A DNA stretch of 64,000 nucleotides, taken from assembly GCA_965644495.1 (NCBI GenBank), contig CBFFSA010000010.1, positions 1 through 64,000 on the forward strand, given 5' to 3'. The notes below the pieces were generated by a model. The model was not told the DNA's origin. It did no database searches and saw only the letters and a program-made list of their open reading frames with translations. Of the stretch, positions 1 to 6,839 are shown piece by piece; the first letter of the stretch is position 1; each line of letters begins with the position of its first letter. A program made the position numbers and the translations under genes. This stretch comes from Perkinsela sp. CCAP 1560/9. Its lineage: Eukaryota; Protista; Euglenozoa: Kinetoplastea.

Positions 1-107
1 TAAATAGAAGATTTATCCCGCTATACCCATTTCCTTTGTAATCAATAAAATATACTATCACAAGTATCACAAAACAGAGCTCTTTAACCTAGCAAATATT
101 CCCTGTA

Positions 108-160
108 ACTTACGAACGGGCGTTATGCCCACCACGTCGCGAACCAACCCGTTCGCACGT
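108..160 (-). repeat. 3' terminal hairpin segment of a YR retroelement
   Basis: cttacgaacggg...tcgcgaaccaacccgttcgcacgt is homologous to 1201-1252 and to the reverse complement of 31615-31668. Confidence 0.65.
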
Positions 161-589
161 CACCACGCACACCAAGTCTCGTTACACACCTCCACTCTCC
201 TCGCACCCTTCACTCCCTCACTCTCCCTCCCATCCCCTCACGACCACCCAACGCAACTAACCACAGTACAGCACCCTTTCACTCATCAAACACGTGTCCT
301 CGTCGTACACGTGTGCATGAATAACTAAAGAACGTATATATAGTATTTTTTTTTTTGCATATAATTGGGGGGAGTAGTATTGAGTCTAATGTTTTTATGT
401 ACGTTTCGAACTTTCCACCACTTAAAACCCTTCACCCTACTTCCTTCCTTCCCCTACTTCCTTCCTTCCTTCCCCTACTTCCTTCCCCTCACTACATTCA
501 CTTCCCTTCCCCCACTTACTCCCTTCCGACTGACTCGTCCCTACTGACCGACTCGTCCGCACTGTGGCCCATGTGGTCCAGGACCTCCG

Positions 590-2688: not shown

Positions 2689-2750
2689 ATCTGATATCTC
2701 GTACGTTTTTTTTTTTTTTTTTTGTAAAAACTATTTTCGGCAACAATCAG

Positions 2751-5672
2751 TCAGTGGCGGCTGACCAATTGTTGTAGATTATGAAATTTTGTATGGCTAT
2801 CTAAACGACTCACGGGATCTGCTGGGTTGTCTTCGGACCGTATGTATCGCGCTTTGATGCAAATCCCTTGATTCTGATTCATCAGTAAAACTTTCTTCAG
2901 TTCGCTAGCGATATTATCGGAATTCGCCATACGTTTATTAATGGCGCCCTGACAAGACGTGTTATCTATGTATAAGTCAATACACGTCCCCTTCTCAAAG
3001 TGATGTTTGAAGTCCTTCAAAGCATTGGTTACGGCCATGGCCTCGGCATGATTTACCTCATATTTAAATTCTTTGGGCCAAGAGTCACCTGTAATCTGTA
3101 CCCCCCCGTCATCGAGATATAGCACTGCTCCCCACCCTTTGCTCGATGCGTCGGTATATAGGCGGTGCGTATGGGGCACGACGTCTGGGTGCGGAGGTGG
3201 TTCAATGGGTATATTCTTTAGCACTTCGTCCCGCCAATCGGCTAGGATGCATCTCGTGGGTTTAGGAAGAGGTACCGGCTTATCCGCTAGGTGAAGATTT
3301 CGGTTTAACATATTAATACGGCGCCTCGCAATTTTGAGCGTAAAATGAAAACGCGGAATAACATACCCAAGGACTGCTGAGGCGTAGAGGAGACGCCCCA
3401 CCGCCGTCTCCAATTGGGCGTACGTAATAGTGTTAAATCGATCACGACGTAACTTCAGTAGTACTCGAGGTCCCAGGCTGACCTTGTGCACTATATGATC
3501 GTAGTTTAAGCCATTAAACACATACTCCAGTTCCGGGGGTGAGCCATGCTCCTTAAAGGCTCCATTAGCTTCTCTACAGCGGGAATCAATCCGCTTGGCA
3601 TATCCAATGGCTTCCTCTTTGCTCGCTGTGTAGCGAATCCCGTCGATATATATATCAACACTGCTCTTTGCAAAACTCGCTTCCGGTTTACACACTCCCG
3701 GGTCACCGGCCAGCACGGACGTGATAGTATGCATCACTTCCGGGGCACATCTATGCCCCATGGGCATAACTTTCATCTGATAGAGATTTCCTTGGGAATC
3801 ACGAAACCGAAACTTCGCGCGCGCGCGCTCTGGGACCGGGACCTGATAGAAACCACATTTGAGATCTCTTTTCACCCCGACCTCCATTTCCACACGATGA
3901 AGGTATTTCGCCGGATGGAGCAGCGGCACGAGCGGATCATATTCCTTCAGACGTTCATTGTCATCCTTAGTCCATGAAATAAAACGTCGTCTGGATTTCC
4001 CTGATTCGTCAGCTTCCACCACCGTAAAGGGTACGAGGTACTGTATAGTCGGTATGTCGCGGGCCATTTGATCCGAAACTCGTTGAATAACATTCGCTGT
4101 GATCAGTTCGTTGATGTCCTTCGTAAGAAGATTCCCTTTAATGGATGGTTCAGGCTGTGGTGGTACTTTGGTGCAAAACATTTTATTCATAATGCGCTCT
4201 AGTCGGCTTCGCGTGTCATTCCTCATCCAAGACTTAACTTTATCCAGTTCCATAGTAGGAATTCCCGTCTTAACGTGTAAGGGGTGATGCATGTCCTGCG
4301 CCTTGGCTAAGCGCGAAGTTCTCCTTGCACAAATAATGCTATACCGCTTAACATGTGGGACCTGCTCGAGGCACCTATCTACATCAGCTTGTGTTATTGG
4401 AGTTGCAGGAGAGCCGAAGCTCGCTGTGTACCGAGCGCTCTCGTGGTGGTCACTAGGTTTGCGTTGTACCGTAATAGGGAGGTAATGTGCTGATGTTTTG
4501 CGAGATTTTGAACGTCTGATATTGTTAGTCTTCCTAGAGCAACCTCCTGAAACAGGTACGTTACCGCTCCGCGCTTGATGGAATGTGTTCCGAATTTCGG
4601 GCCCAGAATCTTGCGTATTCGGAGATCCATCTCCCGTACTGTCGTGGCGCTTATGCGCTGCCCTGCAATCATATGCCTGACGTGTTGAGCTATCTCTGGA
4701 GTCCCTGGACCCACTATCGTTGTGCACATGGATAACCGATACGGGTTGAGTCGTGTGGTTTTCGTTTGCCGCCCCCAATACACAATTACTTCGTTGTCGT
4801 CCACCTTGACAAACCGGTCTTTGGTCAATTCGGCTACCTCGGTCCATCGGCCCGCGGCTTTCCAACAGATCAACACCGCTATCGAATCCCTTGGTATGAG
4901 TTTGGCGCGCAACTTTCTGATATGCCATGGGGTCGCGGGCTCCATTTGGCGGGTTGGTTCTAGCGCTCCCTTTGCTTGCAATGCTTTCGCGTATAGCTGT
5001 AGAGGTCCTGTGGGTTTGTGGGCGAGGTTGAATATCGATTGGAGGCTTCGTGCATATGCGAGAAGTGTTGCGGGTGCAAGATTCAGCTGATCGAGGAACA
5101 CTACAGCGTGTAGGGGTTCGAGGGGGGCGTTTCCCGCGTTGCAAAAGCGGGCCAGTCGATCCCACAACCGACTTCGTGTCATCCAGGTGGCTGTCGTCCA
5201 CATGGGGTCTATCGCGCGGCATATCGGTTCGACTACCGGCATTCTCGGTTCCAGTCCCAACAAAGTGCATGTCAGTCTGCGTTTTGCTTGCAGTTCGTTC
5301 ATGTTTTCGCTTCCGACGACGTCGCGGGGATCGGGATTTGGACGCTCCCGCTTCGGCGCGTGGACTACAGACCGTATAATGGTCGGAACACTTGCATCCG
5401 TATTCCCGGATGAAGGCCAAGAACTGTTTGAAAAGTTCACCCGCCGCGTTTTCGGCAGCTGGGCACGTGCAAAAAAGCCTGGTTTTTTCACCCTCCGTTT
5501 GACAAACGGTCGGGCACGAGCGAGATAAGGGGTGGGGGGCCTTCCCTATTGGCCCCTCTTTGCACCAGCGGTGCCGCTCGTCACCCCCGAGCGAAAACCC
5601 GTGGCGAAGCTGCGCTGCTGGGCTTGATTTAAGGTCGGACAGTACGCACGGATGTGGCCCGGCTTGTGGCAT
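2751..5672 (-). CDS. Reverse transcriptase-RNase H (N-terminal frame overlaps YR)
   Basis: RDLKCGFYQ, MPMGHRCAP, YIDG; RNaseH YTDAS, EAMAV, YIDNT, NPADPVSR; true start uncertain. Confidence 0.9.
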   Translation of the reverse strand: MPQAGPHPCVLSDLKSSPAAQLRHGFSLGGDERHRWCKEGPIGKAPHPLSRSCPTVCQTEGEKTRLFCTCPAAENAAGELFKQFLAFIREYGCKCSDHYTVCSPRAEAGASKSRSPRRRRKRKHERTASKTQTDMHFVGTGTENAGSRTDMPRDRPHVDDSHLDDTKSVVGSTGPLLQRGKRPPRTPTRCSVPRSAESCTRNTSRICTKPPIDIQPRPQTHRTSTAIRESIASKGSARTNPPNGARDPMAYQKVARQTHTKGFDSGVDLLESRGPMDRGSRIDQRPVCQGGRQRSNCVLGAANENHTTQPVSVIHVHNDSGSRDSRDSSTRQAYDCRAAHKRHDSTGDGSPNTQDSGPEIRNTFHQARSGNVPVSGGCSRKTNNIRRSKSRKTSAHYLPITVQRKPSDHHESARYTASFGSPATPITQADVDRCLEQVPHVKRYSIICARRTSRLAKAQDMHHPLHVKTGIPTMELDKVKSWMRNDTRSRLERIMNKMFCTKVPPQPEPSIKGNLLTKDINELITANVIQRVSDQMARDIPTIQYLVPFTVVEADESGKSRRRFISWTKDDNERLKEYDPLVPLLHPAKYLHRVEMEVGVKRDLKCGFYQVPVPERARAKFRFRDSQGNLYQMKVMPMGHRCAPEVMHTITSVLAGDPGVCKPEASFAKSSVDIYIDGIRYTASKEEAIGYAKRIDSRCREANGAFKEHGSPPELEYVFNGLNYDHIVHKVSLGPRVLLKLRRDRFNTITYAQLETAVGRLLYASAVLGYVIPRFHFTLKIARRRINMLNRNLHLADKPVPLPKPTRCILADWRDEVLKNIPIEPPPHPDVVPHTHRLYTDASSKGWGAVLYLDDGGVQITGDSWPKEFKYEVNHAEAMAVTNALKDFKHHFEKGTCIDLYIDNTSCQGAINKRMANSDNIASELKKVLLMNQNQGICIKARYIRSEDNPADPVSRLDSHTKFHNLQQLVSRH
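4394..5491 (-). CDS. Tyrosine recombinase
   Basis: WKAAGR (R), HSIKR (HxxR), AKH, LLRY catalytic set; true start uncertain. Confidence 0.9.
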   Translation of the reverse strand: MKKPGFFARAQLPKTRRVNFSNSSWPSSGNTDASVPTIIRSVVHAPKRERPNPDPRDVVGSENMNELQAKRRLTCTLLGLEPRMPVVEPICRAIDPMWTTATWMTRSRLWDRLARFCNAGNAPLEPLHAVVFLDQLNLAPATLLAYARSLQSIFNLAHKPTGPLQLYAKALQAKGALEPTRQMEPATPWHIRKLRAKLIPRDSIAVLICWKAAGRWTEVAELTKDRFVKVDDNEVIVYWGRQTKTTRLNPYRLSMCTTIVGPGTPEIAQHVRHMIAGQRISATTVREMDLRIRKILGPKFGTHSIKRGAVTYLFQEVALGRLTISDVQNLAKHQHITSLLRYNANLVTTTRALGTQRASALLQLQ

Positions 5673-6583
5673 TTGTAGCAGAGTAATGCAGGCTTGGCCG
5701 GCCCCTTGGGAGTACGCAACTGTCGAAGTTTCTCGTCTGCGACAGCCTTCGTATACGCGTCCTTAGCGTCGTCGTGCTTATGCAGCTTTAACTGGAGATT
5801 TTCAATCGGAATGCCTTGAGATGCCCAGTAATGGTTCCGTAGTTCTTCGATTGCTGTTTGGACAATGCTCAGAAAATACTCTTCACGCCATATTGGGTAC
5901 ATACGAGCGGCATACACCCAATCCTGAATAATCTTAAAGAGACGCTCGCGGATGGGCGGGGGGTGAAATAACAAGCCAAACTCCGGTGCCGCCCTAAGAT
6001 CTCGGATGAGATCCCTCACGCGCAGCTCATCTTCGGATTCAAGCCAGGGCCCCCAGGTCAACGGTTCATAAGTCGTGAACTTGGCGGGGTCAGTCACAAG
6101 CTGCGGTGTTGCTTGCCCATCTTCAGTCTTCCGCCCCCCTGGCATGACTGCTCGGACACTAGAGATCTCTAGGGAATAGTAATTAATATCCGGGAAAGGG
6201 AAATCGTATGCCATACCTGGCTCGTCGGACCACTTCGCCTCCAGGGACCCCGATCCATCGCCCTTAAGAGAAATGTTACCCACTACCGTTTGACGATGAG
6301 TTTCCCCTACGTGGCCCCACACGGCCTCAACAGATACCTGGTACCCTCGAGCTACTAAAGATTTAACTTTAGCAGCAAACTCCATCTTCGATTCCTCTGA
6401 CATGGCCTCCGCGCCATCCCCACCTCGAAGCAAAGCCGCCACTTGCTCGGGGTTCAGGGTGTTTCTCTGGTCCCGTCCTTGTCGGAGAGATGGGCTCACA
6501 GGGTCGTTAGGATCAACTGGTGGAGGACTGTCCTGTCTGCCCATAGAGAGTGTTCGGCGCACGGTATTCAAAATACCTGCCAT
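5546..6583 (-). CDS. Gag-like protein with CCHC zinc knuckle
   Basis: C-terminal CYKCHKPGHIRAYC; ATG 37 nt downstream of the SL. Confidence 0.85.
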   Translation of the reverse strand: MAGILNTVRRTLSMGRQDSPPPVDPNDPVSPSLRQGRDQRNTLNPEQVAALLRGGDGAEAMSEESKMEFAAKVKSLVARGYQVSVEAVWGHVGETHRQTVVGNISLKGDGSGSLEAKWSDEPGMAYDFPFPDINYYSLEISSVRAVMPGGRKTEDGQATPQLVTDPAKFTTYEPLTWGPWLESEDELRVRDLIRDLRAAPEFGLLFHPPPIRERLFKIIQDWVYAARMYPIWREEYFLSIVQTAIEELRNHYWASQGIPIENLQLKLHKHDDAKDAYTKAVADEKLRQLRTPKGPAKPALLCYKCHKPGHIRAYCPTLNQAQQRSFATGFRSGVTSGTAGAKRGQ

Positions 6584-6620
6584 GGAAAAACGTTTTTGTT
6601 GTTTATAGGAGGAAATGTCA

Positions 6621-6655
6621 CAACAAGGTACAGAAACTGTATCTTTGTCGTTAAA
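6621..6655 (-). other. Spliced-leader exon copy in the gag 5'UTR
   Basis: TTTAACGACAAAGATACAGTTTCTGTACCTTGTTG, 34/35 identical to 1080-1114; flanked by a 12-bp direct repeat at 6609-6620 and 6656-6667. Confidence 0.85.
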
Positions 6656-6839
6656 GAGGAAATGTCACTAATATACAGTATATTTATAATTACCTCAATC
6701 TATCCCTGGTACATAGATAAATAGTTTAGACCCATTTCGGGGTAGAATTTGAAAACAGTTTAGACCCCTTTCGGGGCACCATCTGCATATCAACAAAATA
6801 AAGTCTCCTAAATTTCTTATCGTAAACTTATACTTTTTC

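What the first reader, a model, noticed from the sequence alone, without database searches (positions are those of the whole stretch)
6609..6669. SL exon written into DNA exactly at an apparent splice acceptor of the YR element
Seen on the minus strand: ...tattAG|tgacatttcctc-[35-nt SL ending TTG]|tgacatttcctc...ATG(gag). The unspliced junction (AG) and the spliced junction (SL) precede the same 12 nt. Inference: RT copied a trans-spliced mRNA through the SL and then switched to an unspliced copy of the 5' repeat. This would show how a YR element restores a 5' end removed by trans-splicing. Alternative: an SL-only retrocopy with a 12-bp TSD.
Basis: partly seen in the sequence, partly recalled or inferred. 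Interest (0 to 1): 0.8.

Follow-up and report, generated by a model that had tools for sequence, protein, structure and literature searches.

The report
Spliced-leader scar in recombinase retrotransposon
A young jumping gene of the VIPER type in a kinetoplastid-like protist carries a DNA copy of the cell's own mRNA cap sequence (the spliced leader) exactly where a splice site predicts it, and at least eleven sister cases in three related families indicate that these elements are copied from trans-spliced mRNA and then completed from a second copy of their end repeat.

Summary
Confirmed and extended. On the minus strand, 6669-6609 reads AG | 12 nt | 35-nt spliced-leader (SL) exon | the same 12 nt, 37 nt before the gag ATG. 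The SL matches the exon of this genome's tandem SL RNA genes at 34/35 positions. Every other copy of this repeat that I found in the 21 Mb (3 five-prime copies, 7 others) has AG + one 12-mer and no SL. The nearest full copy is 99.5% identical apart from these 47 nt.

The same AG-x-SL-x layout recurs in three related families with the gag-YR-RT/RNaseH order: 11 more SL|x joints, with x of about 9 to 175 nt. x follows an AG in all four families. Every SL-bearing repeat is the 5' one. In about half of the events the upstream part ends exactly at the 3' edge of the repeat.

Not tested: RNA use of the AG and raw DNA reads, because only assembled contigs were served and none bridges the joint. The scan has already reported this kind of scar on another piece of this genome (s1-686837).

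The parts
6668..6832 (-). 5' part of terminal repeat A1 (element start at 6832) down to the AG at 6669-6668. It corresponds to the outron side of the inferred trans-splice site.
   Evidence: Homology to sister copies starts at 6832. This part is identical to ten other A copies over the last 60 nt.
6656..6667 (-). First copy of x (12 nt), in unspliced context directly after the AG.
6621..6655 (-). DNA copy of the spliced-leader exon, positions 4-38 of the 38-nt exon (3-38 if the C at 6656 is counted). There is one variant base at 6647.
6609..6620 (-). Second copy of x, joined to the exact 3' end of the SL exon. This is the inferred trans-splice joint.
6590..6608 (-). Remaining 19 nt of repeat A. 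The repeat ends at 6590, 31 nt after the AG in the ancestral form.
   Evidence: In the 3' copies (A2) homology ends here and a C-rich linker follows.
5546..6583 (-). ORF1, gag-like, 345 aa.
   Evidence: It is 44% identical to ORF1 of family 2, which carries a CCHC zinc knuckle.
4394..5491 (-). Tyrosine recombinase ORF, 365 aa.
   Evidence: Weak Pfam Phage_integrase match, E 0.008. The nearest ESM Atlas feature clusters are almost all Phage_integrase, score 0.98. R, K, H-x-x-R, H and Y positions are invariant across three families.
2751..5672 (-). Long ORF carrying the RT and RNase H domains, 973 aa.
   Evidence: Pfam RVT_1 and RT_RNaseH. 46-61% identical to sister families.
2700..2724 (-). Internal (A)n tract after the RT/RNase H ORF. 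Here and in sister copies it is a nest for unrelated poly(A) retrocopies (window 2700-357).
1..356 (-). Internal 3' region of the same element, ending in the first 143 nt of repeat B1. The contig starts here, so the rest of B1, A2 and B2 of this copy are not visible.

Best explanation
The element is a VIPER-like tyrosine-recombinase retrotransposon: gag, YR, RT/RNase H, with split direct repeats A1 ... B1-A2-linker-B2. Its transcript is trans-spliced at an AG that lies 31 nt before the end of repeat A. In the event recorded here, reverse transcriptase copied such a spliced, capped mRNA through the leader to about its third nucleotide. The leader end of the cDNA was then continued on, or joined to, another copy of repeat A, 12 nt downstream of the same AG, with at most 1 nt of microhomology. 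This rebuilt the 165 nt of repeat that splicing had removed and trapped the leader between two copies of the 12 nt. The product integrated as an otherwise normal copy.

Shown: the anatomy; the identity of the leader; the ancestral state in sister copies; recurrence of the same layout in four families; the 5'-only location; and the preference of the upstream part to end at the edge of repeat A. Inferred: that the AG is used in RNA; that the joint was made by template switching or end-joining of the element's own cDNA; and that normal copies arise the same way but through the homology of x, which discards the leader.
For: The leader ends exactly at the exon's 3' end and is followed by the sequence that follows an AG in all sister copies. 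The nearest sister is 99.48% identical and lacks only the 47 nt, apart from two 2-3-nt indels.

Recurrence:
- Family 2: C33:43788 and C17:228471.
- Family 3: C4:399457 and C21:4612.
- Family 4: C36 three times, C52, C21:14524, C8:75352, C103.

The AG precedes x in each family. The families are related YR elements with the same gene order. The split repeats are seen in C16 and C3.

The upstream part ends exactly at the end of A in C33, C4 and C36, and at the end of A plus 3-13 filler nt in C65, C52 and C21:4612. In C33 the first x shares a 7-T run with that element's own A2, while the second x has 6 T. The leader copies start at position 3, often preceded by AT or GAT, as in the poly(A)-linked retrocopies of this genome. 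This points to capped RNA templates. No SL-bearing A2 copy was found.
Against: There is no RNA evidence that the AG is an acceptor. The only putative RNA run has no contig on the element. The tract upstream of the AG in this family is AT-rich rather than pyrimidine-rich. No public contig bridges the joint, so the insertion rests on the assembly alone. In the window the upstream part ends 12 nt after the AG and not at the repeat edge (+31), so it is an atypical member of the series, and its microhomology is no better than chance. A few SL-body joints elsewhere in the genome do not follow an AG (C26:54507; SL+TACCTTGTTG relics), so not every leader joint here is a simple splice product. A2 of this copy lies beyond the contig start.
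Confidence: 0.75

Rival explanations
1. cDNA-mediated conversion of a resident copy. A cDNA of the trans-spliced element mRNA, made by any reverse transcriptase in the cell (for example the abundant endonuclease-bearing LINE-like elements), recombined with an element already at this locus. The 3' side was resolved by homology and the leader end was joined non-homologously 12 nt after the AG.
For: The genome is full of leader-headed retrocopies made in trans: 521 leader cores in 21 Mb and chains at poly(A) tracts. Foreign leader-headed units are found joined to repeat A, for example at C22, 2-5 nt before the same AG. For the window's own event, nothing separates this model from a switch during the element's own replication.
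Against: It does not explain why about half of the sister events end exactly at the 3' edge of repeat A, which is a discontinuity only in the A2 context. It also does not explain why SL-bearing family-2 copies sit at two loci with unrelated flanks.
Confidence: 0.15
2. A leader-only retrocopy (35 nt) inserted by target-primed reverse transcription, with a 12-bp target-site duplication that happens to follow an AG.
For: The layout x-insert-x formally resembles a target duplication. Endonuclease-bearing non-LTR elements are present in the genome.
Against: The inserted piece ends exactly at the exon boundary and has no poly(A). Among roughly 190 leader contexts inspected, every x-SL-x case lies in a YR element's 5' repeat directly after an AG. 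The 'duplication' ranges from about 9 to about 175 nt and often reaches exactly to the repeat edge.
Confidence: 0.03
3. An assembly or library artefact, such as a chimeric read or cDNA contamination placed into a repeat near a contig end.
For: The site is 6.6 kb from the contig start, in nested repeats. Public contigs show only the form without the 47 nt.
Against: Sequencing error cannot create an exact leader exon with a precise duplication. The same layout occurs on at least eight other contigs. Assembled contigs drop minority variants of multi-copy repeats.
Confidence: 0.03

Closest known systems
VIPER / TATE (VIPER-like) tyrosine-recombinase retrotransposons of kinetoplastids (PMC6681497; PMC5814959)
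   Same: Same gene order gag-like, YR, RT/RNase H. Same split direct repeats: A1 at the 5' end and B1-A2-B2 at the 3' end. Solo A-B units comparable to SIRE. The host has kinetoplastid-type SL trans-splicing.
   Different: I found no report of a spliced-leader copy inside VIPER or TATE DNA in the papers searched. Phylogenetic placement of these families within the VIPER-like group was not tested.
Relict spliced leaders in dinoflagellate retrogenes (PMC5585692, PMC6050394, PMC12014239)
   Same: The DNA-encoded leader at the 5' end of a retrocopied, trans-spliced mRNA serves as a fossil of reverse transcription. This genome also shows repeated re-splicing at the leader's own AG.
   Different: Here the leader is not at the 5' end of the copy. 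It is internal to a transposon's terminal repeat, flanked by a duplication that begins at the acceptor, and it sits in an autonomous YR element rather than a cellular gene.
DIRS-1 end-restoration model (Cappello et al.; tested in PMC7192593)
   Same: A sub-genomic transcript lacks most of the left repeat, and the missing part is rebuilt from the other repeat before integration by the YR.
   Different: DIRS-1 has inverted repeats and an internal complementary region, and its 5' truncation comes from the transcription start. Here the repeats are direct and the truncation comes from trans-splicing. The scar gives the positions of both cDNA ends.
SLACS / CZAR / CRE site-specific non-LTR elements in SL RNA genes
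   Same: A retroelement lies next to spliced-leader sequence in a kinetoplastid.
   Different: Those elements insert into the SL RNA gene between leader nucleotides 11 and 12 (PMC5814959) and are flanked by gene sequence that includes the intron. Here only the exon is present, it ends exactly at the splice donor position, and it lies inside another element.

Membership tests
VIPER-like YR retrotransposon | ORF order gag-like, tyrosine recombinase, RT/RNase H | tested here: met
   ORFs at 6583-5546, 5491-4394 and 5672-2751. RVT_1 and RT_RNaseH matches. YR supported by a weak Pfam hit, Atlas features and the motif set R, K, HxxR, H, Y. CCHC knuckle in the family-2 ORF1.
VIPER-like YR retrotransposon | Split direct repeats A1 ... 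B1-A2-B2 | tested here: met
   Seen complete in the sister copy on C16 and in the diverged copy on C3. In the window copy only A1 and part of B1 are visible, because the contig starts inside B1. The C24 copy has A-internal-B only.
VIPER-like YR retrotransposon | Phylogenetic grouping of RT/RH and YR with VIPER/TATE | not tested
The big protein searches were not spent on this.
Retrocopy of a trans-spliced RNA (relict SL) | DNA copy of the SL exon identical to the organism's SL RNA gene exon and ending at the splice donor position | tested here: met
   34/35 identity to the exon of the tandem SL RNA genes. The copy ends at TTG, where the genes continue gtatgag.
Retrocopy of a trans-spliced RNA (relict SL) | The sequence after the SL follows an AG in the unspliced parent | tested here: met
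   Ten unspliced copies read tattag + x. The same holds in families 2, 3 and 4.
Retrocopy of a trans-spliced RNA (relict SL) | The joint is observed in RNA | not testable with these tools
   No run on record as RNA holds the stretch. The one putative RNA run, served as contigs, has no piece on the element.
Target-site duplication of a TPRT insertion | Duplication of roughly constant length at sites unrelated to splice signals, with a poly(A) at the 3' end of the insert | tested here: not met
   There is no poly(A). x varies from about 9 to 175 nt, always starts after an AG, and often ends at the repeat edge.

The most novel reading that the evidence does not exclude
Trans-spliced mRNA is the regular replication template of these VIPER-like elements. 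First-strand synthesis starts exactly at the 3' edge of the internal repeat A2, perhaps primed by the conserved hairpin formed by the C-rich linker and the G-rich start of B2. The 24-31 nt between the acceptor AG and the repeat edge act as a terminal redundancy, analogous to a retroviral R region, and this redundancy lets the cDNA be closed or extended so that the leader is discarded. SL-bearing copies would then be the cases where the two cDNA ends were joined without using that homology, so they mark both termini of the replication intermediate.
Probability: 0.35. Interest if true: 0.85.

Novelty: new variant of a known kind. Interest (0 to 1): 0.66.

Why it matters
How tyrosine-recombinase retrotransposons with split direct repeats (VIPER, Ngaro, PAT) rebuild complete ends from incomplete transcripts is known only as a model. 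The primer and the cDNA ends are unknown even for DIRS-1 (PMC7192593). In an organism where every Pol II transcript is cut by trans-splicing, the problem is sharper still. These scars are natural records of the template (a capped, spliced mRNA), of how far the cDNA ran (to leader position 3 plus cap-associated extras), and of where it was joined (most often the exact 3' edge of the repeat). That turns the model into something testable with RNA-seq, 5' RACE and cDNA sequencing in a culturable protist. The scars also supply an internal marker, the leader, for dating and counting replication events.

Tried and rejected
- Raw-read and RNA checks. The look-up of sequencing runs gave five runs, all stored as contigs. 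Read laying showed only the form without the 47 nt and no piece across either joint, and the putative RNA run does not cover the element. This is uninformative rather than negative.
- Microhomology as the cause of the +12 joint. The leader's 5' end matches the repeat no better there than elsewhere (9/16 ungapped; a local alignment at least as good arose in 44 of 500 shuffles). Rejected as an explanation.
- The idea that the variant C at 6647 came from heteroduplex repair against the repeat. It rests on a single base, and the same variant occurs in an unrelated retrocopy. Dropped.
- Searching for an unspliced parent of a leader-headed SINE-like family, to learn what acceptors look like. All copies carry the leader.
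- A TPRT model in which the whole element is an mRNA retrocopy inserted at the A|B edge of a solo A-B unit. The internal (A)n tract is not adjacent to B1 (213 nt lie between them) and A2 follows B1. Rejected.
- PDB sequence searches with the YR ORF and with a three-family profile found nothing. NCBIfam found nothing.
Those families are documented only by 66-80-nt pattern read-outs.
- A literature search for the leader core sequence gave no relevant paper.

Full report
THE OBSERVATION. Read on the minus strand, the stretch is: AG (6669-6668), a 12-mer (6667-6656), 35 nt ending TTG (6655-6621), the same 12-mer (6620-6609), 25 more nt, and then the ATG of a 345-aa ORF (6583). The 35 nt are a copy of this organism's spliced leader. 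Tandem genes 297 bp apart on contig 1 read AAC plus these 35 nt followed by gtatgag. A metagenome contig carries an SL RNA gene with the same 38-nt exon behind a different upstream sequence, which fixes the exon start. The core ACAGTTTCTGTAC is the kinetoplastid/diplonemid leader core; that identification is from my own knowledge. The window copy differs from the genes at one base (6647), a variant found at only one other place in the 21 Mb. Because the C at 6656 could belong to either part, the copy starts at leader position 3 or 4.

THE ELEMENT. Homology to sister copies starts at 6832. The element encodes a gag-like ORF, a tyrosine recombinase and RT/RNase H, in that order. The recombinase call rests on a weak Pfam hit, on ESM Atlas neighbours that are nearly all Phage_integrase, and on invariant R, K, HxxR, H and Y positions across three families. 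This is the VIPER gene order (PMC5814959).

A sister copy on contig 16 and a 71%-identical relative on contig 3 show the full layout: A1, ORFs, an (A)n tract, about 210 nt, B1 directly abutting A2, a 25-nt C-rich linker, then B2. These are the split direct repeats described for VIPER (PMC6681497). Repeat A is 196 nt, and the AG lies 31 nt before its end. In the window copy the (A)n tract has collected unrelated poly(A) retrocopies, and the contig begins inside B1, so A2 and B2 of this copy cannot be seen.

THE INSERTION IS PRIVATE TO THIS COPY. Three other 5' copies and seven other A copies all read AG + one 12-mer + the rest of A. The leader|12-mer joint is unique in the 21 Mb. The copy is 99.48% identical to the contig-24 copy over 4076 nt, with evenly spread mismatches, and the 47-nt gap is the only structural difference apart from two 2-3-nt indels. 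The event is therefore recent.

READS. The runs that hold the stretch are stored only as assembled contigs. They show the 47-nt-less form, and their break points are explained by the repeat edge at 6590. No contig crosses either leader joint. The one possibly-RNA run has leader contigs but nothing on the element.

GENOME-WIDE SURVEY. The leader core occurs 521 times in 21 Mb. These include SL RNA genes, many retrocopies of the form poly(A) + (G)AT + leader from position 3 + body, re-spliced relicts, and stuttered 5' joints. I read about 190 leader contexts by partitioning on the bases after TTG. Every case in which the sequence after the leader is also found directly before it lies in a YR element:
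- Family 2: C33:43788 and C17:228471.
- Family 3: C4:399457 and C21:4612.
- Family 4: C36 (three copies), C52:2572, C21:14524, C8:75352, and probably C103:8389.
- Joint counts by family are 1, 2, 2 and 7.

Family 2 is a true relative: gag 44%, YR 55% and RT 46% amino-acid identity, the same gene order, and a CCHC knuckle. Its two SL-bearing copies are 99.5% identical over 4 kb but have unrelated flanks. Families 3 and 4 could not be fetched. They share the A / C-rich linker / ORF1 layout in the pattern read-outs.

WHAT THE SERIES SHOWS.
(i) In each of the four families the unspliced x is preceded by AG: tattAG, ttgtAG, actcAG, tgttAG. The leader|x joint is therefore a trans-splice joint, not a coincidence.
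(ii) x is not a fixed-length target duplication. It is 12 nt here, 19-27 nt in family 2, 24 nt (plus filler in one copy) in family 3, and 24, 30 or about 175 nt in family 4.
(iii) In C33, C4 and C36 the upstream part runs exactly to the last base of repeat A and then the leader begins. In C65, C52 and C21:4612 the same edge is followed by 3-13 filler nt (GAT, or stuttered leader starts) and then the leader. That edge is a discontinuity only in the A2 context, so in these events the upstream partner was A2-derived. In C33 the first x shares a 7-T run with that element's own A2, while the second x has 6 T.
(iv) All SL-bearing repeats are 5' copies followed by the ORF1 ATG. No A2 carries a leader.
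(v) The leader copies begin at position 3, often preceded by AT or GAT, exactly as in the poly(A)-linked retrocopies. This suggests cDNA made on capped RNA and stopping at the modified cap-proximal bases. The cap chemistry is inferred from kinetoplastid cap 4 and not shown here.

MECHANISM. The best reading is as follows. A trans-spliced, capped element mRNA served as the template. The cDNA ran through the leader. Its leader end was then continued on, or joined to, a second copy of repeat A. This restored the 165 nt removed by splicing and trapped the leader. When the join uses the homology of x, the leader is lost and a normal copy results. When it does not, an AG-x-SL-x scar remains. This is the DIRS-type idea of rebuilding the left repeat from the other repeat (PMC7192593), adapted to trans-splicing.

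For the window's own event the join is at +12, with at most 1 nt of microhomology, which is no better than chance. It could be a template switch, a nibbled end-join, or recombination of a cDNA with a resident copy. I cannot separate these alternatives for this copy. A leader-only insertion with a target duplication is excluded by points (i) to (iv).

A FURTHER LEAD. Right after the A2 edge, the C-rich linker pairs with the G-rich start of B2 in families 1, 2 and 4. The core pairs are invariant, and only one pair in the family-specific extension is compensatory, so the covariation evidence is weak. A fold-back primer there would start cDNA exactly at the repeat edge, which would explain the preferred joint. 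This is speculation, and it forms the basis of the novel reading.

COMPARISON AND NOVELTY. DNA-encoded leader relics are well known in dinoflagellate retrogenes (PMC5585692, PMC6050394). VIPER-like elements with split repeats are known in kinetoplastids, including Bodo (PMC6681497). I found no report of a leader trapped inside such an element, or of its use to infer the replication template. The survey here was done independently and agrees with both.

Noticed in passing
G000 C22 around 108435, minus strand (L040, L071, L072): A second, independent joint between repeat A of this same family and a leader. B1-A2 runs to 2-5 nt before the same AG and is then followed by a leader copy heading a different ORF-bearing unit with its own poly(A). 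The rest of A2 and B2 are missing.
   Followed up: partly
G000 C2:1477459, C13:378745, C36:33535, C42:58080, C52:50189: Relict leaders. A full leader is followed by the leader's own last 16 nt (re-splicing at the leader's internal AG), as in dinoflagellates, with up to three relicts in series. Some relicts (last 7-10 nt) do not follow an AG.
   Followed up: partly
G000 C9:675852, C1:3103765, C4:369008, C92:6928, C9:712330-712520: Stuttered 5' joints of the form [flank + partial leader][same flank + full leader], and runs of aborted leader starts. These suggest repeated template jumps at the capped end.
   Followed up: no
window 2700-357, minus strand; also L061 and C22: The (A)n tract after the RT/RNase H ORF of the YR element is a nest for co-oriented poly(A) retrocopies. 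These include 3' ends of an endonuclease-type LINE with a structured 3' UTR, and a leader-headed unit at 1114-357.
   Followed up: partly
L061:2660-2729 (-), L073:818-887 (+), L077:1548-1617 (+): Directly after the 3' edge of A2, a C-rich linker (CCCACCCACC...) pairs with a G-rich segment at the start of B2, giving stable hairpins in three families. The family-specific stem extensions differ, with one compensatory pair.
   Followed up: partly
L062 (G000 C24:4000-12500): The closest sister copy ends at the end of B1 and has no A2-linker-B2, so it is a unit-length A-internal-B form. Solo A-linker-B units also occur in tandem at 419-bp spacing (C34:57947, 58366 and 58785; C21:19061 and 19480), comparable to SIRE of T. 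cruzi.
   Followed up: no
G000, 30 or more loci, e.g. C1:1468238, C16:201054: A family in which the full leader always sits behind the same non-poly(A) upstream sequence (...CACGTACAATAAT) and ahead of an ORF. The leader is thus embedded inside a larger propagating element. A second leader-headed ORF lies 1.2 kb downstream (L011, L012).
   Followed up: no
G000 C82:712-815 and C1:3218565: Head-to-head inverted leader copies: the reverse complement of the leader's 3' part is joined to the leader's 5' part. These look like snap-back cDNA products.
   Followed up: no
G000 C65:37285-37410, minus strand: Family 4: complete repeat A + GAT + leader, but the leader is joined to repeat sequence starting 23 nt upstream of the usual AG. 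This could be an alternative acceptor or a second kind of joint.
   Followed up: partly
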